A stretch of DNA of 64,000 nt from Selaginella moellendorffii (lineage: Eukaryota; Plantae; Lycopodiophyta). The notes beneath the pieces are model-generated. The model made no database searches. It was not told the DNA's origin and saw nothing but the letters and a program-made list of their open reading frames with translations. A program made the position numbers and the translations under genes. The stretch spans positions 382,752 to 446,751 of the forward strand of contig NW_003314283.1 in NCBI RefSeq assembly GCF_000143415.4, given 5' to 3'. Below are positions 8,193-23,772 of the stretch, piece by piece (position 1 is the stretch's first letter; each line of letters begins with the position of its first letter).

Positions 8193-9194
8193 TCTTTGTC
8201 TTGAATTCGTAATTTCCTATTAAGCAATTTCTGGTTGTCAAGCTGAATTTCTAATGGAAAACTCTTCTTGCGTTGTGAAAAAAAATATCTCTCTCGTTTT
8301 TCTAGTTGGTTGGCATCAGTAAACGAGTTTCTTTGCAGATTGCAAGAGTCGAGTCTTGTTTCTTCTCAGGCATCATCCCCGATCCATAGGAAGTGCCTGC
8401 TTGCTCCCACAACTCACGTTGCCACTGCCAGTTCAGCACTCATGTGGGCAGCTGGAGTTGCACAAGTCTGGATGCTTTGCTGCAAGGTAGGAGGGATTTT
8501 GACCAATGTCATCAAGGTAAAGTATGGTAATTTAAATAATAATAAAGGTGTGGAAGCATTAGCAATGAGTTGTAGGATTTGACAATTATAAAACAACTAA
8601 GCAAAAGTTGCAAAATAATTGATTGAATTGGTAAAAATTAATTATCTGTAAACACTTGGTAGTGACCTAAGATTGATGCAAGGTTGCATTGTGTAACAAC
8701 AACACACTTGGGAGATTTCATAGTGCATGGCTCTAGAGCTGGATCTCACACTTTGCAATAGCAATGCAAAAGTTTCAATTCAAGTATTTTTTATGGCGTG
8801 CAATTCATAAAAGGGTGAGTGTTACTGTGGTAGATTTCACTCACAATACAGTGTCCATGTGGCAGTTTTTTATTGGTTCGGCATTAAATGTCATTTGGAT
8901 GCCTCATGGATGCCCCATGGATGCTGGCCGATGGGTCAATGATGTCCCCATAATATGAACAATGTGTTACACATAGATGCCACATATCATCAAGTTTGAC
9001 CCCATGACATGGGGATTCATCAAGTCATAGGGTTTAGGAGATGCTTCCTTGCCTTAGCGCCTTGCTTTAGTGCTCTGTTATTCGGCATATTTCTTGGTAG
9101 CAAATGTGGAAGGTAATTTGGTTTGCTAGTGAGTGGTTTGAAATGTTTTTGTGGGTAGTGTTGGAAGTGGCTTTGATTTACTACTTGATTGTTC

Positions 9195-10947
9195 TTTATG
9201 GACTTTCAAGTTCCTACCATGAATATAGTTCCCTCCCTAGTTTACTTCAAATTTGTGTCACTAAAACTTTTTCTTCCAGGTTTACTAGAAGACGTGGAGG
9301 AAGATGAAGTGGATGGCCTTCCATCCAATTTTAGTGATTCGAATTGTGGTTCCAGTATGGATAGTGACAACGATGCTCTCCCAAAGGTTTGTTTAGTTTC
9401 CAGCCTCCTAGATTCATGATTTGCACATTTCTAGGCCTTCTATAATTTTTTGCAATCAAGGGGATTCGGTAGTCCAGCTGCATTTGGCACTTGGATGCAC
9501 ATGAAGATCCTCGAGACTAAGACTACTATTTACCTCGCATGCTATCTTAGAATTTCCAAGCCAACATTGTACAAATACATGCAGCTTGTCGATCTAAATT
9601 GGAGAGGTGTATATTATAGAGTACCACCTGAAGAGGTACTTCATCACGTTCAAACTAACAATGCTATGAATCGAGGTGGCACAAACTGAGGGATTATCAA
9701 TTCTCGATCTAGTTGTCGAACTGGAGGATACCGATTTAGCCGACACCAAATTTGTGAGGCCTTAGCCACTCACGATCCAAGTAGGCTGGAACAGAGGCAC
9801 ATGACAAGGATTCGACGACGGATTTATAGGAATGAGGAGGCTTATGCACTTTGCTATATGGATTGTGAGTATTCTTTCATTTCTGTTTTTTTGTCAGCAC
9901 ATGTGGTAATATGTTTATTGTAGCATATTGCAAGTTTGTAAGCTATGGTTTCTATGTACATGCCATTATTTGCGGGGCAACTCATTATATTGTAGCTTGC
10001 AAGCTAGCTACCTCCAAAGAATCCCATACAATATTTAACATATATGCGTAGACTGTTCGTCGATTTGGAAGGCCCAAGCACATCCGGAGCGACAATGCTC
10101 CAGAGCACAATGAGGTTGAGAGGGACATGATCCGCTGTTGGGGTCCTGCAGCTAGGAGCTTCATACGTGGGATATCAACATGTAACCAGGTATTCACAGC
10201 GTTAGAGTTTTTCCAAATAAGGACTCATAAGACTAAATCAAATTTGTTTTACAGCGTATAGAGCATTTGTGGAGAGAGCTCTTTGAGCGCGTGGTGTGGT
10301 TTTATAAGCACCTTTTTGAGTCCATGGAAGATATAGGAATTCTCGATGTATCTAATCCATGGCACAACCAGAGTCTACGTTGTGTCTTTGCTCCGTACCT
10401 CAAGAAGGATATTTCACACTGAGTTGCAACCTCCATGAGGTCCGTCCGTATCGATGTGGTGATTACTTCAAACCATCTCATGTTCCTGCAAACTTATTTC
10501 AACCGATGGAACGAGAGCTTGGGTAACAATTTTGGTAATGTTATAGAATTCCTAATAAAATGTGCTTTTGTAGGATTATGCCGAGTGTTGGTGGAAAAGA
10601 TATTGAAAACCTTCCCGGACCATTTCTCTTTAATGTCGAAGGTGCAACTTTGTCAGAGGTAATCTTTAGAGCAAGAATACAATAATTTCTTTAAATCTAT
10701 TTTGTTGTGCTTGGCTACCTTACAGGCTCTTGGCACTGTTCGAAACCAGGCATTTTTGATGCATCGGGAGGGACTCAACTTAGACAAGCAATATCTACTT
10801 CATTTGGATCTAACAATGGAGTGTGCAATGGCTGATGTTGCGGGTGTAGATCTACCACTTTACATCGAGAGTGCCTTGCCTACAGCAACACCAGTGAAGC
10901 GACAAGCTTTGGAAAAATTATACTTGGCCATACTCGGAGAAAATTGA
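9195..10947 (+). pseudogene. Spliced IS3/rve-type DDE transposase with premature stops
   Basis: Hand-spliced exons give an HTH-like LRISKPTLYKYM, then HDP..RIRRRIY..ALCYMD (D at 9861), GFYVHAIICG, FGRPKHIRSDNAPEH (D at 10091) and SFIRGISTCNQ/RIEHLWRE (E at 10261). Stops at 9687, 10049 and 10420. The start is uncertain. Confidence 0.8.
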
Positions 10948-11212: not shown

Positions 11213-14200
11213 GATGGTGGGTAACTTCTCCTCGATCAGGTTTGCATAACTAATCCTTTGTGGTTTCTAGGCTAGAAGCAAGAATGCCGCACGCCTCAAC
11301 AGCAGTAGACACTATGCAGGAAACACCTCGCGAGCACGCAGCCAAGCACTCGATGTTCCGCAATTGGTACAGCCAACAGTCCCGTGAGACACACGCCAGC
11401 CACTTGATTTTCTAAGCTCCACAGCAGGGACATCAACTCCAACAGCATCCCATCCACAGCTCCTGACTGCATTTGAGCAAGCAGAGCGCCGCCTAACATT
11501 GCATACATTGCAACATATGCAGAACCTCCAGCATGTTTCATTCTCCTCGCCTTCCTTGGAAAGTAGCAGCCCGCGCATTCGAAATGAGCAAGTCCGGACA
11601 CCTCATGCCCACGGTGTTGTCCAATCTGGAATGCTGCCACCAACACTAACTACAGGACGTGCTCACGGAATCCCATATAGTGCCACTGCTACCAGCCCCG
11701 CAACTCCACCAACCACTACAACTCTTGCAACTCCATCTACCAGTACAAGTGCCAATACCTGGCCATCTACCTCCCGAAGCAACAAGCTGTCTAGCTCGGT
11801 AAGTTTTTCATTTGTACCCGTGTTTTTTTCCATGTGTTTTTCTGCGTAGGGTGAGTTGACAATGCCGCCACACCAGCGAGCTTATAGTTCCCCATCAGCA
11901 TTCCACAACTACTCCCAAGGATCGACATCATCATTTAGTGGAGCTTCGACATCCAGATATGTTCAAGCTGACCCTCAAGGCGGGCTGCCATGTGAGCCAC
12001 AGGTATAACATGACCCCATGCACTCTTCATTTTTTTCTTCTTTGGATTTGTTTAACTCATTTTTGTTTCACTGTGCTAGACTCTCTCACTGCTTGTGGCT
12101 GCAGTGCACACCTATGCCGATAACAATCGGCAGTCCTTATCTTGTCGTCGTGGACGTCGTGGCAGTCGATCCAAAGTCATTTGTGGGATGTTGTCTACGA
12201 CACCCTTGGTCCCCCGGCCATTCACCACAGTTCTTGTCACCAAGTGGATTGCAATCCCAAAGACTTGGCATGTACACTTATATGGGCGGAAAAGAGAGCC
12301 ATCTGTGAAGGTGACGGAACTTGACGAGTTGGCAGTGGACCTCCCAGAGTGTCTCATATGGGGTGGCTTATACTCCAATATTCTTTTCCAGCCCAGCACA
12401 GCCCAACATGCGTTTCTACTATCACTCCAAGCCTCAGGAATCCAACCTTCATCCATGACCAACCCAGGAGCATTTGTCCAGCGTGCAAGGCAGTTCAATG
12501 GTGGTGAGGCCCATACCGAGTCTGCAAAATTTGGCCTCAGCTCTATCCGGCCTTGCTACTGGCCTCCTCAAACATCATGGGGAGCTATAGCAAACAAGGC
12601 CAATGGCAATCAGGCAACAGTAATATATTTATACAATGTTATGGAGCATCTTACTAACAAACATTGGCTAAGTTATCAAAAGCAGGCCTGAGCACTCGAG
12701 GAGAAGGATGTTTGTGAACGTAAGTCATTTTTTTTTAAGTTCCCTCCTCACAAATATATGTTGTGGTCTTTGCAGTTGTAGCTATTACAAATACCTTGAC
12801 TGCAAATGATGATCCAAAGCCAGCCACGTAGGAACCAAACCCTTACGAGAATAATGAAGAAGAAGACTCTGCGGATGAAGAGGACATTCTTCCATTACCA
12901 GAAGAAACTCTCCCCATACAAGACAACATGGACATTAGTGGAGTCAAAGAACAAAGTGATGGTGGGGATGAACCGCACCAAGGATCTCCGGAGACATCCT
13001 TGTCACCAGAGATAGTGGCTCCAGGCCATGCGGCTGGTAAAAAGCATTAACATAAATGAATATTTTCTTCATTTTCTAATTTCTGAGTGCAGATAGGCCA
13101 ATGGTAGTGTATGACAGTGATGGCAGAGGCCTTGAAGACCATGGTGTGCCTCCACCCCCCTTTCTAGAGGGAAGTAGCTCCACTCCATTTACTCTTATGG
13201 AGTTGCTTGACAACTTTTTTACAGTAGAGTAAGATAATTGAAAATTGTGCCATTCAAAATTGAACTAATGTTTGCATGTAGATTGTTGGAGCGTCAACAA
13301 AGATGGATTGATGCCACCAATGCATTTAATGAAGCTATTCAGTTAACCACTTAGGATAGTGCCAACTTCATCATGCTGCAGATTGAGGAGGTTTCTACCT
13401 TACAGGATGCCACCACAACCCTTGAGGTGAGGGCACAGGGGGATGCTAAAGTTCTCTCATAGGTGCAGTGGCTGAAACACAAGCTTCTTGGTTGCTTTGG
13501 CGTGGAAAGCACAAGTGACGAGGAGATGCTAGACACTATTGCTAGACACCCTGAATTCCATTGGGTTGGCGATGAAATATTTTTGCGGCGCGTGCTTTTC
13601 AACCAAACCATGCCTCATTGGCAAGATTGGGAGAGTCTTCTCCTTAAGTTTGGCCTTTCAGAAGCACAGTACAAGGATGTGTTTTGTGACAACACAATCC
13701 AACAGCTCCTTGCTGAAGTAAGTATTAATGTACCTCCTTCAATTCTTGAGTCCACAATAGCATGGTTCATTGAGAAGAGGTATGTGTATCTATTTCTTAG
13801 CACTTAGTACTATCTTATGGTTTTGTGCAGGGACCTACATAGGAATTGGGCGGCTGCACAACAATTGAGAGAACTATTTGACACTACTAAAACACCGTAT
13901 TGTAAGTTCTCTCATTTTTGCATCGAGAAGGCCATGCTTCGGCCATACAGACTTGCTTGTACACGTTTGAGGCCATCTCGCATTCTAGTAAGCAATGAAT
14001 TGCCTATGAATTGGAGTTACCTCACTTGTCCTTCTAGATTGCACCAAACAATGAATTCAGTTGTTTCCAATTTGCCTTCAATACTAATCTCCGCACACCG
14101 AATTACAAAGTGGTCTATGCGTCTGAGATTGGAGGAGCTTTGGTGTGGGAGGAATCCACAATAGATGCGGGTGGGCCACATGCAAAAGCCATTAGGGAGG

Positions 14201-15343
14201 CTGTTCACCAGATTCCAGGATCAATAAGTTTAATTTTCACTTGGCTCACTAGAGTAACTTTGTGTTACAAACGCGTGGACTGTTTGTGCTTAGGGAAAGA
14301 GCCACATATTGGCATCCTAAGATGCCAGTGCATTTTAGGACATTGCAACAAGAAGAGCGGGATGTGGTAAGTTAAGTTTAAAGCACAAGTTTTATATACT
14401 CCTCATTTTTATATGCACAAGCTATCTTTGTGGGATGGTTGCTATTCCAAGCATTCGAATGTAATGCACAGGTTTCTCACAGATGTACAATTGCAACATT
14501 GGCAATTGCAACTAGAGAGGTTCCAAACGAGGATGACTGACGACTTGCCCGAGGAGGACTATATGAGATGGACCTCAAGGCATGCACACTGCATATCTGG
14601 AATGCACTCAACCAATTGCGAGGTGCATCAAGCCTAAAGGAGGAGGGCGATCGGCACAAGTCTGTGGATTCCATCCTAGAGAACCCTGCAATTACTGACT
14701 ACAATGCAGTGCTTGAGTCTAGACTCACTGAACTTGGTGAAGGTTATGAGGAGGCTGTGGAGGCATGCGTGGCTGCGGTGGTTTGGCATTACCTATTCAT
14801 TGAGCCAAATGTAGTGGGAGACTTACTCCGAGATGGCTTCCAACACTTAATGCGCATGGAAGCTCGTCAGAGGCCTCACAAGAGTCCAGCATTGCTAGGT
14901 GGGCTTTCACTCATTGGGACAGATGCTTTGTTACAGGTCTTCTGGGTAAGGACGATCATTCCTCACGCGGAGTTCATCAACTGCCTGATCTTTGATCAGG
15001 ACTTTGGAGAGAACTTCCGCAGCTGGATTGTGGACATCATTCGAGGTAACTATTTACTTTCACAAACAACTAAAACTCTTGTATGTTTGAACATTTTATA
15101 GATATAAGCCTGAAAGAGTTATCCAAGTTCCATCACTTTGTGGTTGATTCTTCAAAGTTCCGACTGGGAGAGCCTATTTGGATCCAAGTTGAGAGACAGA
15201 GTACATCATCTACTTGATTTCCCAGGTTCTCCACATGCACACGAGAAGTTTTCTTCCCTTTAACATACCTGTCAAAGGAGTGGACCAAACACAAGATCCA
15301 CCAGACACTCCAAAATCTAGAGAGCTTGTATGGATTGGGCTGA
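11213..15343 (+). pseudogene. Multi-exon cargo gene(s) ending in a HECT-like E3 ubiquitin ligase domain
   Basis: S/T/P-rich N-terminus. EESTIDAGGP at about 14150-14178. Last exon reads ELSKFHHFVVDSSKF...*FPRFSTCTREVFFPLTYLSKE...YGLG-stop, with Cys at 15236. Several internal stops; exon structure and start are uncertain. Confidence 0.62.
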
Positions 15344-15483: not shown

Positions 15484-16074
15484 TTATAGGCACTTGCAGC
15501 CCTTGGTACCCTTTTGGCTTATGCTTGTCTCACCAAGCGTAATCACTATAGCTTCCAAAGCAGCTCCCAATTTAGGTTCTGGGTCAAAACTATCAAGTTT
15601 GGGTGCTATATGATGCCCATCCTCACTTGAGGAACTTTCAACCTGTTTGGTAGAACCAAAATCACCCTCTGGGTCTGTGAACTCGTCCTTGCTTGCATCT
15701 CGAGCAGTAACATATCCCTCGCTGTCGCTTTCTTCAGCAGGACCTTTCCCCTCGGTGATTGGCACAAGATTAGAAGTAGTCTTGGGCTGCCTTGTCGGAG
15801 GGATTGTCGAGCCTTGAGAGGAGGAGGCATCATATAGAATCCTCGATCCTGTCCCCTGTTGGATCCATTGTTGTGCCTCAAAGAAGTCATAAAATCCTCT
15901 CCAGTTTGCCATGCCAGGAGGAAACCTAGAAACCTCAAACATTGCAAAAGGGTTAGACCATATAGGAAACTGTTACAAATCTACTCTTACCAAAATGAGC
16001 ACAAGCTTCCAATCTCTGAAAACTCCAATTCTTTGGCCACAGCGCACGGCATATATTGGATAGTTTTGCCCCAT
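15484..16074 (-). CDS. Cargo gene with an RNase H1 N-terminal (Cauli_VI, hybrid-binding) domain and an acidic disordered tail
   Basis: Splicing out a short intron (acceptor uncertain) gives MGQNYPIYAVRCGQRIGVFRDWKLVLIL/VSRFPPGMANWRGFYDFFEAQQWI, which matches the YAVxxGxxxGIYxxW...FxxxxEA pattern. Confidence 0.65.
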
Positions 16075-17734
16075 GCTTGGAAACCCTTTTTACAAATTTC
16101 AAAATTTGAAACAGTTATGATTGGAAAATATTGTAAGTGTCCATTGTCATTGCTCTTCTCACCTAAATGTTACTACATGCAATTGCAACTTCCATATTCT
16201 CAAATCTCCTTCAGCATGCTCCTCTTGAGAGAACTCCAGGTTCAATTTGAAACAATTATAATTGGAAAATGTTGAAAGTGTCTATTGTTATCCTGAATGT
16301 TACTACATGTAATTGCAACTTCCACATTCTCAAATCTCCTTTAGCATGCTCCTCTTGAGAGAACTCCAAGTCCAAACATCAACACTATGCACCTTTGCAT
16401 AGTACATAATTGAAGTATGAGCCCCACCAATTCATCGAATTGGTTAGACTTCAACCTAATTTTGAGTCATATGCAAATCTTCTAAGCATCATGGTACAAA
16501 ACTCAAGTGTTGAGAGAGCTACACTGGAAATCAATTGCAACGAAAGATAAACTCAATGGGATTAAAGACATGACTCCAAATAGTATATATCCATGGCTTT
16601 GCAATGGAGCTAGATGGAGTTCACTTACGTTTGCTATGAACACTATGTTAAAAGAGGCGTGCCTAGGTGTGACTCAATTTCCAACATTTTCCAGCTATGA
16701 GAGCCCAGGAGTTCTTCGCGTCCATGGTGAATGCACCTCAAGAATCACAGTGCAAGACGGAGGAAGCAAGAGGATTCAACGATTGCTTAGACGCTGTGGC
16801 GGGTAACAATGGGAGCATCGATGATTGCGAGCAGCACAGCAGCGGTCGGCAATGTGGGGAGGATACGGCGATGGCTGTCGATGACAATCAAGGCTGCCAC
16901 ACTCCCAAATTCTAGATGGAGTCCACTTACGCTTGCTATAACACTATGTTCAAAAAGGTGTGCCAAAAAAGGATAATTTAATTCTTTTGCCATGAGCGCC
17001 AAGAGCAAGATGTGAAAACATAGTGCTCTAGATAAGGTAGTATGGTATGCAATTTAGTCGATTGTCCATTTGGTTTGCAACATTAACAACTTGCTCGAAT
17101 GCATGGGATGAATGGGTCTATGGGCCAAGAATGGCTCCATTCCATACATAGCATGGGTCATTGCTATGGGCATGATGCCCCATCCGGGGCATAAGGATTG
17201 GATATTCGTAAAATATTCTATGCCTGTGTTTTTTTCACACTCATAATACACGTAGACCAATAACAGGCATACACGTGGTGTGAGTGAAATCCACCATTGT
17301 AAAATCCACCCTTTTATGAATTGCATGCCATATTTTTAAACTAACTTAATGCATTTAGAACTTTAACACTCACTCAAGAGATGGTGCAAATTGAACCTGT
17401 CAGGTTGCATGGCATATGAAAGGAATTATCCCTTTCCATTGAGGTAAGAATTGCCACTTAAATGCTAAAAACAAATGATAAGAAAGGAATTATCCTTGGT
17501 AAGAAGGCAACAAAGCTTGCTATGCTGGAGGTTGCACACTTGGGATGCTAAAAACATATGATAACTCTGTCCATCCATTGGTAGATTTTAAAATTATTTT
17601 AATTTGGACTTTATGTATGGCTTAGTATATAAGAGGTGCCTATACCACGTCTTTTAGTTACACGTGTACTTAAACACTAAAACTTAATTATCCTCACTCA
17701 CACTTTTAAATTAATTAATTGAGTAGAGCTATAG

Positions 17735-18691
17735 ATGGAAATGATTATATTACTAATTATTTCTTTTCCTTTATGCATTTTAGCACCACCACCATTTGGA
17801 TATATATTTCCTGATCAGCCTATGACGCTTTACTCCAGTGATCCTGATGCACTATCTAGAGATAATTTTAAAGCTATATTGAAGAATATAGATGAATATA
17901 TTGGCTCCCTGAAAGGAGAAAAAACTCTTCCAACAAAGAGTTACTCAAGAACGTTTTATATTACTGATAATGTATATTGTATTTTAACATTATGGATTCA
18001 TTTGCCACTGGGTTTAAATGCAAAAGAACCTACTTATACATTATGCAAGATAATCCCACTACAATATGGATATAATGGATATGAAGCTTATAATATTTTT
18101 CACAGGCTTCGGGATTATATTTCCACGAATGCAACCACTATAGGTAAAGACCAAAATAAAAGGTATTTTGGAGAATTTGAAGCTAATTTAAGAAATTTTG
18201 CTATGCAATATAATGTTTATGGTTCACATCCTCCAACATTTTATAATAATTTTATTATTGAAAAAATTTCTTATAATAATTATGATGGTTATTGTGATAT
18301 TTATAGATCATCTCTTANNNNNNNNNNNNNNNNNNNNNNNNNNNNNNNNNNNNNNNNNNNNNNNNNNNNNNNNNNNNNNNNNNNNNNNNNNNNNNNNNNN
18401 NNNNNNNNNNNNNNNNNNNNNNNNNNNNNNNNNNNNNNNNNNNNNNNNNNNNNNNNNNNNNNNNNNNNNNNNNNNNNNNNNNNNNNNNNNNNNNNNNNNN
18501 NNNNNNNNNNNNNNNNNNNNNNNNNNNNNNNNNNNNNNNNNNNNNNNNNNNNNNNNNNNNNNNNNNNNNNNNNNNNNNNNNNNNNNNNNNNNNNNNNNNN
18601 NNNNNNNNNNNNNNNNNNNNNNNNNNNNNNNNNNNNCTATCTTTATATTTATGATACAGAGAAAGGTGAAATTTTATGGTCAGCTCATTAA
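17735..18691 (+). CDS. Secreted AT-rich protein with a C-terminal bulb-type (B) lectin-like domain, copy A
   Basis: Hydrophobic signal peptide, no introns seen, and the frame is preserved across a 319-N gap. The domain is inferred from paralog B (SLVSPYTNYRLTM..CQL, CFAHLDRTGHL, LEVSDNGYLYIYD..LW). Confidence 0.62.
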   Translation: MEMIILLIISFPLCILAPPPFGYIFPDQPMTLYSSDPDALSRDNFKAILKNIDEYIGSLKGEKTLPTKSYSRTFYITDNVYCILTLWIHLPLGLNAKEPTYTLCKIIPLQYGYNGYEAYNIFHRLRDYISTNATTIGKDQNKRYFGEFEANLRNFAMQYNVYGSHPPTFYNNFIIEKISYNNYDGYCDIYRSSLXXXXXXXXXXXXXXXXXXXXXXXXXXXXXXXXXXXXXXXXXXXXXXXXXXXXXXXXXXXXXXXXXXXXXXXXXXXXXXXXXXXXXXXXXXXXXXXXXXXXXXXXXXXYLYIYDTEKGEILWSAH

Positions 18692-22461: not shown

Positions 22462-23772
22462 ATGTGGTCGCTAGAGCCCAGCTTCTTCGATGAGCATGGA
22501 GCGCTTGTAAGTGATCTTCCAGCGCTAGATCCAGAAGATGCAGCTGCATGGCTCTCCGCTTCCACCACTTTCTCGACATTGAGCATCACGGCATCGGTGA
22601 GGGGCGCTGTTTTGCGATCTGTGAATGCCGAACAGCGTTATAGGCAATTGCACAGGGTGGAAAAGGAAAACAAGTACCCTGGCTGGATGCTACTCAAAGT
22701 GGTGCTTGCGGAAGTGCATTATCTTTTGTTCGACAAAGCTGGGGCGCAGCAGCGGCTGCTGGATGTCCAAGATGCCATAGGGCGTGGTAAGGATGAGCAG
22801 CTGGACAGGGCCGTGCTGGAGCTTTCCAAGCTTATCCAGGAGGAGGACGATGGAGATGAAGATGACGAAGAGGCGGAGGTGGAAGAAGGCATGCAAGTCA
22901 CTTCCTATGTGCGACCTCAACCTTTCTCGTCTGTTCCGTGTTCGTGGAGTGCGGAGGAGATTCGGCACAAGTGGCAGACGAGAACAGAAGTTGATATTGC
23001 TGAGTTTGGCCGCTACGCAGCCATCACCACAAACGTCCTGGAAGGAGTGTTTTCGCTTGAGGGTCGCAGCTTGTCGCGGCTGGTCAAGCGTGGATTCGAC
23101 GTTGACTCGATCGAGGGTATTCCTGTCACCAGTTGCATCAAGAGGAAGGCCAAGAGGAAGGCCAAGAGGGAGGCCAAGAGGGAGGCCAAGATCGTGCAAA
23201 TCCTGGAGAACACACAGTCCTGCTTCGAATACCTCATGAAGAATTCTGCTGCTTTCAATGACTCGACGATCCAAGATGTACACAAGAGACTTATGGAGGA
23301 AAACAATCTCAACCACAAGGTTGACAATGGTCGGTTTTATGCTTGTCTCGTGCCTTGTGGCAGCTACCGCCGAGTTCCATGCTATACAACCAATGGCAAC
23401 TTGGAAACTCGATTTTGTCCTTGGAGGCAGATCCCTACGGAGATGCAGTGGTTCTTTGAAGAGGCTCGGCAAGCAATGTCCGACGACTCTGCTGATCCAT
23501 TCTTGGTGTCTGCCTGGCTACACATCGCGTTTCTCAGCATTCACCCCTTTGCTGATGGTAATGGTCGGGTGGGCCGAATGATTTCCTCTCTTCCACTTGT
23601 CAAGGCAGGGCTCCCCCCTGTTGTGGTATCTTTCGAGCAGAAGCGGAAGAAGAAGTACTTCGCTGCACTGATAGAAGCTCGTAAGTCGGGTGATCTAGTA
23701 CCGCTGGCTTCGTTTCTGAAGGAAGAGGTTGAGCTAGCGATCATTCACATCTCCAATTTGGATGATGCTTGA
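22462..23772 (+). CDS. Fic/Fido-domain protein (putative AMPylase), copy B, intact and intronless
   Basis: Canonical HPFADGNGRVGR motif, with an upstream TNVLEG matching the (S/T)xxxE(G/N) inhibitory motif. Confidence 0.92.
   Translation: MWSLEPSFFDEHGALVSDLPALDPEDAAAWLSASTTFSTLSITASVRGAVLRSVNAEQRYRQLHRVEKENKYPGWMLLKVVLAEVHYLLFDKAGAQQRLLDVQDAIGRGKDEQLDRAVLELSKLIQEEDDGDEDDEEAEVEEGMQVTSYVRPQPFSSVPCSWSAEEIRHKWQTRTEVDIAEFGRYAAITTNVLEGVFSLEGRSLSRLVKRGFDVDSIEGIPVTSCIKRKAKRKAKREAKREAKIVQILENTQSCFEYLMKNSAAFNDSTIQDVHKRLMEENNLNHKVDNGRFYACLVPCGSYRRVPCYTTNGNLETRFCPWRQIPTEMQWFFEEARQAMSDDSADPFLVSAWLHIAFLSIHPFADGNGRVGRMISSLPLVKAGLPPVVVSFEQKRKKKYFAALIEARKSGDLVPLASFLKEEVELAIIHISNLDDA

What the first reader, a model, noticed from the sequence alone, without database searches (positions are those of the whole stretch)
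15484..16074. Stand-alone RNase H1 hybrid-binding (Cauli_VI-like) domain gene, convergent with the HECT gene
A small intron splits YAVRCGQRIGVFRDW from GFYDFFEAQQWI, so the ORF track misses the domain. This fold binds RNA:DNA hybrids or dsRNA in RNase H1 and in caulimovirus P6, a silencing suppressor. No catalytic RNase H domain follows. It may be an R-loop or siRNA-related accessory factor of the transposon (inference).
Basis: partly seen in the sequence, partly recalled or inferred. Interest (0 to 1): 0.72.

Follow-up and report, generated by a model that had tools for sequence, protein, structure and literature searches.

The report
Transposon-borne RNase H1 hybrid-binding-domain gene relic
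A small two-exon gene inside a dead spikemoss (Selaginella moellendorffii) cut-and-paste transposon really does begin with the RNA:DNA-hybrid-binding module of RNase H1 and has no nuclease part, but the gene is decaying like junk DNA in the family's copies, so its open frame here is probably luck, not function.

Summary
On the minus strand, exon 1 (16074-15991), a 57-nt GT-AG intron (15990-15934) and exon 2 (15933-15484) give an open frame.

- **First half of the domain: solid.** Exon 1 alone matches the RNase H1 N-terminal hybrid-binding domain (Pfam Cauli_VI, 20.4 bits; 25.4 bits in a sister copy, cut-off 21). Against a bacterial/phage domain profile, hhalign gives P 5.5e-9.
- **Second half: weak.** It aligns in the right register (hhalign P about 0.01), but Pfam, HMMER and the ESM Atlas do not recognise it.
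- **No catalytic domain follows.**

The gene lies in an 8.5-kb GingerRoot/IS3EU transposon of Selaginella moellendorffii (54-nt terminal repeats, TA..TA ends, 5-bp target duplication). All 11 copies examined that keep this region carry it. Only two have an open two-exon frame (this one and L021).

Substitutions look neutral. The real frame does not differ from wrong frames, the intron or the flanks. An open frame at this copy's 2% private divergence has about a 0.58 chance.

The tail has no relatives outside these copies, and no parent gene was found.

The scan has noted this gene before on other DNA of this genome. Verdict: a real but probably inert relic, of low to moderate interest.

The parts
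15991..16074 (-). Exon 1: 28 codons. Start codon, then the first half of the hybrid-binding domain (the Y-A-V-x-x-G-x-x-x-G-V-F-x-x-W motif), then a hydrophobic KLVLIL stretch.
   Evidence: Pfam Cauli_VI at 20.4 bits, E 6e-4. hhalign P 5.5e-9. Best of 2006 six-frame pieces of the window. All 30 Atlas hits were PF01693 clusters. The only PDB hit was 3BSU, the human RNase H1 hybrid-binding domain.
15934..15990 (-). Proposed 57-nt GT-AG intron with a CTAAC branch-like site. It is in frame but holds a stop codon.
   Evidence: Read from the sequence. Length 57 in all 11 copies; GT..AG kept in ten, L008 has TT at the donor. Not tested with RNA.
15856..15933 (-). Exon 2, first 26 codons: candidate second half of the domain (strand 3 and helix B).
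   Evidence: hhalign places it on profile columns 35-51 at P 0.0085. The score was reached by 1 of 208 random 30-mers and 5 of 208 shuffles. No hit in Pfam, PDB or the Atlas. HMMER gave -1.2 bits.
15484..15855 (-). Exon 2, remainder: a 123-residue tail rich in Ser, Thr, Gly, Pro, Asp and Glu (net charge -8), plus the stop codon (15486-15484).
   Evidence: No Pfam family. The only relatives are other copies of this transposon. Composition.
15856..15857 (-). Alternative acceptor AG used by the public gene model (135-nt intron, 151-aa product without the second half of the domain).
   Evidence: P0001, SELMODRAFT_413918. Sister models use the same acceptor.
16103..16375 (.). Two head-to-tail copies of a unit of about 141 bp, lying 29 nt upstream of the start codon.
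   Evidence: the repeat finder families D1 and D2. Also present in other copies. Tandem Repeats Finder did not report it.
8792..8845 (.). Left terminal inverted repeat of the 8541-bp element.
   Evidence: 54-nt arms, 87% complementary. TATGG..CCATA ends and a 5-bp target duplication, TTTTT.
17279..17332 (.). Right terminal inverted repeat.
9009..10947 (+). Transposase gene: a helix-turn-helix piece plus an integrase-type DDE core, split over several frames.
   Evidence: Pfam rva_4 at 1.5e-12 and 9.9e-5, rve at 0.016, HTH_17 at 0.002. The annotated 299-aa product carries PF24764.
11214..15217 (+). Second gene of the element (annotated 733-aa product), convergent with the domain gene.
   Evidence: Gene model. 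No Pfam or PDB sequence hit here.

Best explanation
This is the third gene of one GingerRoot/IS3EU DNA-transposon family of Selaginella moellendorffii.

Its founder sequence encoded the RNase H1-type hybrid-binding domain at the very N-terminus. The first half is certain; the second half probably follows a 57-nt intron. After the domain comes an acidic, probably disordered tail, with no nuclease domain.

Such a product could only bind duplex nucleic acid (RNA:DNA hybrids, less well double-stranded RNA) without cutting it. That is inferred from what is known of the domain in human RNase H1 and caulimovirus P6.

The family is now dead. Its copies accumulate mainly C-to-T type transitions with no regard for the reading frame. 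The window's copy is one of two among 11 whose two-exon frame is still open, most likely because it is young (2% private divergence), not because it is used.
For: **Domain**
- Exon 1 alone scores 20.4 bits against Pfam Cauli_VI. The sister copy L005 scores 25.4 bits, above the cut-off of 21.
- hhalign against nine bacterial and phage domains gives P 5.5e-9.
- Exon 1 ranks first of 2006 six-frame pieces of the window, by 17 bits.
- All 30 Atlas hits are PF01693 clusters.
- The second half aligns in the right register at P about 0.005-0.02.
- The distance from the Trp to the Phe-Pro equals that in the domain alignment A3 and, from memory, human RNase H1 (sequence).

**Element**
- Terminal repeats, TATGG..CCATA ends, 5-bp duplications and an rva_4 transposase.
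- These termini match those reported for IS3EU (PMC10045372, PMC12730594).

**Family**
- All 11 copies that keep the region hold the gene.

**Decay**
- Nine of 11 copies have stops or frameshifts.
- The transition/transversion ratio is 5.6.
- pN/pS is 0.58-0.67 in the real frame, against 0.32-0.66 in wrong frames and 0.38-0.89 in the flanks.
- Among young copies, 10.2% of coding sites vary, against 8.8% of intron sites.
- The chance of an open frame at 2% divergence is 0.58.
Against: - The second half of the domain is not recognised by Pfam, HMMER or the Atlas.
- The helix after the Trp is replaced by hydrophobic KLVLIL, and the conserved Glu seen in most reference domains there (A3) is missing.
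- The loop before strand 3 is two residues longer than in the reference domains.
- The public gene models skip the second half.
- No RNA data could be consulted, so even past expression is inferred.
- Two open copies among 11, plus an earlier scan note of an intact copy, leave room for a recently active master copy.
Confidence: 0.6

Rival explanations
1. It is a working accessory factor. The master copies express a nuclease-free hybrid- or dsRNA-binding protein. It shields transposon transcripts or R-loops from host silencing, as the related motif in caulimovirus P6 is thought to help do, or it steers the integrase to transcribed DNA. On this reading the window copy and L021 still encode it.
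For: - The gene is at a fixed place in every copy.
- It has its own start codon and a canonical short intron; S. moellendorffii's intron-length distribution groups with fungi, not other land plants (PMC6157073).
- Two copies have open frames.
- Fungal IS3EU families carry accessory genes thought to counter silencing (PMC12730594).
Against: - No selection signal in any comparison.
- Nine of 11 copies are broken.
- No relatives outside this family.
- The second half of the domain is weak.
- An earlier scan note (s1-366185, not checked here) says another copy was silent in sampled RNA runs.
Confidence: 0.12
2. It is a captured host gene fragment. The founder element picked up the 5' end of a host RNase H1-like gene (its start, the hybrid-binding-domain exons and an intron), as GingerRoot elements often do. 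The fragment never had a function of its own.
For: - GingerRoot elements frequently carry gene fragments (PMC6839031).
- The domain sits at the extreme N-terminus and is followed by a low-complexity stretch, as in RNase H1.
- An intron lies inside the domain.
- The middle helix is degenerate.
- Evolution looks neutral.
Against: - No parent was found. An exhaustive HMMER search with exon 2 hit only transposon copies.
- The word-indexed searches with exon 2 and with residues 1-40 also hit only transposon copies. Those searches are limited by length window and by word matching.
- The gene lies in the autonomous-type element, not in a stripped-down derivative.
Confidence: 0.2
3. The public 151-aa gene model is the true product. 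Splicing uses the 135-nt intron, so the protein has only half a domain plus the tail and cannot fold as a hybrid-binding domain.
For: - Most public models join exon 1 at this acceptor: P0001, P0004, P0014, P0015 and P0017.
- Five of 11 copies are open under this model, against two under the 57-nt model.
Against: - The models are automatic. In the sister copies they must avoid stops that lie in the skipped 78 nt.
- Stops per stop-prone site are no more frequent in the skipped part than elsewhere: 10 stops on 8 such sites against 7 on 9, my count.
- The 57-nt intron restores the domain's spacing and register.
Confidence: 0.2
4. The similarity to the hybrid-binding domain is a chance match in non-coding transposon DNA.
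For: The window's exon 1 alone is 0.6 bits below Pfam's cut-off. The second half is not significant with HMMER.
Against: Four independent scorings agree on exon 1. A sister copy passes Pfam's cut-off.
Confidence: 0.02

Closest known systems
Hybrid-binding domain of eukaryotic RNase H1 (Pfam PF01693 Cauli_VI; human domain, PDB 3BSU)
   Same: It lies at the extreme N-terminus. It has the Tyr-Ala-Val...Gly...Gly-Val-Phe..Trp motif of strands 1-2 and the same Trp-to-Phe-Pro spacing. A low-complexity linker-like stretch follows.
   Different: There is no catalytic RNase H domain. Helix A is replaced by KLVLIL. The loop before strand 3 is two residues longer, and Arg-Gly stands where the Lys-Lys pair lies. 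The second half is not recognised by Pfam or HMMER.
Caulimovirus P6 (ORF VI, viroplasmin/transactivator), after which the Pfam family is named
   Same: The same motif is carried without a nuclease by a selfish genetic element of plants.
   Different: P6 is a large multi-domain viral protein. Nothing else is shared, and no similarity outside the motif was seen in any search. What is said here about P6 function comes from general knowledge and was not tested.
Bacterial and phage RNase H / 'viroplasmin family' proteins with an N-terminal hybrid-binding domain (e.g. Priestia megaterium plasmid pFDU301A, L009:1489-2685)
   Same: Exon 1 is 48% identical over 21 residues to the Priestia domain. That domain is a full Pfam match.
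   Different: The bacterial proteins continue into an RNase H catalytic domain. This gene does not.
IS3EU/GingerRoot DNA transposons, including fungal IS3EU families that carry TET/JBP and alpha-kinase genes
   Same: TAYGG..CCRTA termini, terminal inverted repeats, an integrase-type transposase, and extra genes beside the transposase (PMC10045372, PMC12730594, PMC6839031).
   Different: The target duplication is 5 bp, not 6 bp. The third gene is a hybrid-binding-domain gene, which none of the papers I could search mentions.

Membership tests
PF01693 hybrid-binding domain | Score at or above Pfam's gathering cut-off (21 bits) | tested here: inconclusive
The window's exon 1 alone scores 20.4 bits. 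Exon 1 of sister copy L005 scores 25.4 bits.
PF01693 hybrid-binding domain | N-terminal strands 1-2 with Tyr-Ala-Val..Gly...Gly-[Ile/Val]-[Phe/Tyr]..Trp | tested here: met
   Aligned to profile columns 4-23, hhalign P 5.5e-9. Pfam profile positions 2-18.
PF01693 hybrid-binding domain | C-terminal strand 3 and helix B (basic pair-Phe ... Glu-Ala..Phe/Leu) | tested here: inconclusive
   Right register at P 0.0085. The score was reached by 1 of 208 random pieces and 5 of 208 shuffles. No Pfam, HMMER or Atlas signal.
PF01693 hybrid-binding domain | Beta-beta-alpha-beta-alpha fold and binding of RNA:DNA hybrids | not tested
   A fold prediction needs the joined product, which has no reference. A binding assay is bench work.
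RNase H1 enzyme | Catalytic RNase H domain after the linker | tested here: not met
   No PF00075 or PF13456 match in exon 2, nor in any minus-strand piece of 50 aa or more downstream.
IS3EU/GingerRoot transposon | Terminal inverted repeats ending TA..TA (TAYGG..CCRTA) | tested here: met
   54-nt arms, TATGG..CCATA, in four full-length copies.
IS3EU/GingerRoot transposon | Integrase-type DDE transposase | tested here: met
   PF24764 rva_4 at 1.5e-12, rve at 0.016. The annotated product carries PF24764.
IS3EU/GingerRoot transposon | 6-bp target site duplication | tested here: not met
   The duplication is 5 bp in the window (TTTTT) and in L005 (GCTCA). It matches at 4 of 5 positions in L007 and L008.
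Captured host gene fragment (Pack-type) | A host parent gene with clear similarity | tested here: not met
   Only transposon copies were found. Limits: exon 1 was searched only among proteins of 83-264 aa that share exact words with it.

The most novel reading that the evidence does not exclude
A plant DNA transposon evolved or recruited a nuclease-free RNA:DNA-hybrid/dsRNA-binding protein as its own counter-defence or targeting factor. This would be a cellular-transposon parallel to the motif in caulimovirus P6. The window copy and L021 would still be able to make it.
Probability: 0.12. Interest if true: 0.7.

Novelty: new variant of a known kind. Interest (0 to 1): 0.3.

Why it matters
GingerRoot/IS3EU elements are known, and so is the hybrid-binding domain. 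I found no paper that reports such a domain as a separate gene of a DNA transposon.

If the protein was once active, it would link R-loop or double-stranded-RNA binding to the transposon-host conflict in an early land plant. It would also give a small, easily expressed protein to test.

As it stands, the evidence says the family is dead and the gene drifts. The practical value is therefore mainly for annotation:
- The public models of all copies skip half of the domain.
- The family makes 5-bp rather than 6-bp target duplications.

Tried and rejected
1. **RNA evidence.** Splicing and expression are untested.
2. **Joined two-exon peptide.** Exons were searched apart, by reference.
3. **Ancestral reconstruction for branch-wise dN/dS.** I used pairwise counts, fixed-versus-polymorphic counts and singleton counts on extant copies instead.
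4. **Second half of the domain alone.** Nothing in Pfam, PDB or the Atlas.
5. **Relatives of the tail, or a host parent gene.** None beyond transposon copies.
6. **An alternative frame.** At the end of exon 1 another frame reads E-A-C-A-H-F, which by eye recalls helix A of the domain. The profile gives it no support (-3.6 bits), and most copies have Arg, not Cys, there. I rejected it as chance.
7. **A remnant catalytic domain in the tail.** The tail motifs 'RDASK' and 'ALEAIV' suggested one by eye. Pfam gives no support, so I rejected it.
8. **A C-terminal prenylation box.** 'CKCL' looked like one, but most copies have Arg at the first Cys. Rejected.
9. **The HECT identity of the neighbouring gene.** No Pfam or PDB sequence hit. 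Left to the reports on that gene.
10. **Phage search with exon 1.** Noise only.
11. **Bacterial promoter/terminator scan.** Irrelevant for a plant.

Full report
**What is there.** The window is from Selaginella moellendorffii: the public protein SELMODRAFT_413918 (P0001) is 100% identical to the product of this stretch and maps to scaffold GL377587.1.

On the minus strand an ATG at 16074 is the first after an in-frame stop. It opens 28 codons that end at 15991, in front of GTAAGA. Fifty-seven bases further on, after a CTAAC branch-like site, TTTGAG|G (AG at 15935-15934) opens 149 more codons in the same frame, down to the stop at 15486-15484.

S. moellendorffii's intron-length distribution clusters with fungi and differs sharply from other land plants (PMC6157073). 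From my own knowledge this reflects short introns, so 57 nt is not odd.

**Is it a hybrid-binding domain?** For exon 1 the answer is yes, by four routes.
- Pfam Cauli_VI gives 20.4 bits, E 6e-4, on positions 2-18 of 44. That is 0.6 bits under the cut-off, for half a domain. The same exon of sister copy L005 scores 25.4 bits, above the cut-off.
- The only PDB sequence hit is the human RNase H1 hybrid-binding domain, 3BSU.
- All 30 ESM Atlas feature hits are PF01693 clusters.
- I collected nine bona fide domains from plasmids and phages by reference. One of them, from Priestia, scores 1.5e-10 on Cauli_VI and continues into RNase H. Against that profile hhalign aligns exon 1 at P 5.5e-9. A HMMER model of it ranks exon 1 first of 2006 six-frame pieces of the whole window, at 22.7 bits against 5.0 for the next.

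**The second half is much weaker.** Pfam, PDB and the Atlas see nothing in it alone, and HMMER gives -1.2 bits. hhalign does place NWRGFYDFFEAQQWIQQ on profile columns 35-51, the expected strand 3 and helix B, at P 0.0085. One of 208 random 30-mers of the window and 5 of 208 shuffles reach that score.

With the 57-nt intron, the distance from the Trp to the Phe-Pro equals that in the reference alignment A3 and, from my recollection, in human RNase H1. However, the helix between them reads KLVLIL instead of the usual x-Glu-Cys-x-x-x, and the loop before strand 3 is two residues longer.

I did not build or search the joined peptide. The whole-domain claim therefore rests on the two exons scored apart. 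I put it at about 0.7.

**No catalytic domain follows.** Nothing turned up in exon 2 or in any minus-strand piece of 50 aa or more downstream.

**The tail.** It has 123 residues, is rich in Ser, Thr, Gly, Pro, Asp and Glu, and has net charge -8. It has no Pfam family.

**Context.** The gene lies in an 8541-bp element bounded by 54-nt inverted repeats (8792-8845 and 17279-17332). The element ends TATGG..CCATA and is flanked by a 5-bp duplication. It carries:
- a transposase with an integrase-type core (PF24764 at 1.5e-12; annotated at about 9009-10947);
- a 733-aa second gene (about 11214-15217), convergent with the domain gene.

The termini and the transposase match IS3EU/GingerRoot as described in the literature (PMC10045372, PMC12730594, PMC6839031). 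The 6-bp duplication of the literature is not met.

I could not confirm by sequence that the second gene is a HECT ligase. Earlier notes of this scan say so; I did not test them.

**Other copies.** I fetched ten further copies (L001-L005, L007, L008, L019-L021). They are 88-96% identical to the window's element. Every one that keeps this region holds the gene at the same place, with a 57-nt intron.

Only the window and L021 have an open two-exon frame. The others carry stops that are mostly TGG-to-TGA/TAG, CAA/CAG-to-TAA/TAG or CGA-to-TGA. There is also a shared 1-nt insertion (L002, L007) and a 2-nt deletion (L003).

Most public models join exon 1 to a 135-nt-intron acceptor that skips the 78 nt of the second half. 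In the sister copies that is where many stops lie. Yet stops per stop-prone site are no more frequent there than elsewhere: 10 stops on 8 such sites against 7 on 9 (my count). So the skipped part is not decaying faster than the rest.

**Selection.** None is visible.
- The transition/transversion ratio is 5.6.
- CpG-rich exon 1 diverges more (15-18%) than the intron (4-11%) or the flanks (0-9%).
- pN/pS in the true frame (0.58-0.67) lies within the range of the wrong frames (0.32-0.66) and of pseudo-frames in the flanks (0.38-0.89).
- Fixed differences between two subgroups are 7 non-synonymous to 2 synonymous, against 52 to 22 within subgroups.
- Among five young copies, singleton changes are 31 non-synonymous or stop to 14 synonymous in the real frame, between the two control frames. 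Coding sites vary as often as intron sites, 10.2% against 8.8%.
- On the tree the window copy has a private branch of 0.02. A simulation gives a 0.58 chance that the frame stays open at that divergence.

**Origin.** An exhaustive HMMER search with exon 2 against 1.84 billion representatives found only copies of this transposon. The word-indexed searches with exon 2 and with residues 1-40 of P0001 gave the same result.

No host parent was found, which argues against a recent capture. But the search for exon 1 was limited to proteins of 83-264 aa that share exact words with it, so an older capture from an RNase H1 gene remains a live rival. GingerRoot elements are known to carry gene fragments (PMC6839031).

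No searched paper mentions a hybrid-binding-domain gene in a transposon.

**Mechanism.**
- Shown: the sequence encodes at least the first half of the domain, probably all of it, with no nuclease.
- Inferred from established knowledge of the domain: a product would bind RNA:DNA hybrids, and less well dsRNA, without cleaving. It could in principle stabilise or mask R-loops or double-stranded transposon RNA.
- Most likely today: nothing is made or needed. The gene is a relic that every copy inherited from the founder.

**Limits.**
- The joined step and the ancestral step were left out.

**Earlier notes of the scan.** The scan has noted this gene before on other DNA of this genome (s1-366185). That follow-up also judged the domain real and the open frame possibly due to chance. 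I reached the same reading from independent tests.

Noticed in passing
window 8787-8791 and 17333-17337; L005 9779-9783 and 18242-18246: This family makes 5-bp target duplications (TTTTT, GCTCA), not the 6 bp reported for IS3EU/GingerRoot. L007 and L008 match at 4 of 5 positions.
   Followed up: partly
window 22462-23772 (+): A 436-aa intronless ORF with a clear Fic/DOC domain (Pfam 8.5e-17), in a stretch with higher G+C than its surroundings.
   Followed up: no
window about 18300-18600: A run of N (an assembly gap) interrupts an AT-rich stretch just outside the element. ORFs there read as X.
   Followed up: no
window 16103-16375: Two head-to-tail copies of a unit of about 141 bp lie directly upstream of the domain gene's start codon and are kept in other copies. 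They could be a promoter, a transposase-binding array or nothing.
   Followed up: no
window 15991-16074 compared with its flanks: CpG-rich exon 1 diverges more between copies (15-18%) than the non-coding flanks (0-9%). The transition/transversion ratio is 5.6, the signature of methylation-driven C-to-T decay.
   Followed up: yes
public gene models P0001-P0005 and P0014-P0018: The automatic models of this gene are inconsistent. Most join exon 1 past the second half of the domain. P0002 reads exon 1 in a wrong frame. P0018 starts inside the second half. P0005 fuses the tail to a transposase N-terminus.
   Followed up: partly
L001 and L002 (GL377568.1, 576-624 kb); L004: Copies here are rearranged or nested: there are inverted segments of the element within a few kb of each other.
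   Followed up: no
L021:7381-7971 (GL377792.1): This is a second copy with a fully open two-exon frame. The element around it is interrupted by other DNA.
   Followed up: partly
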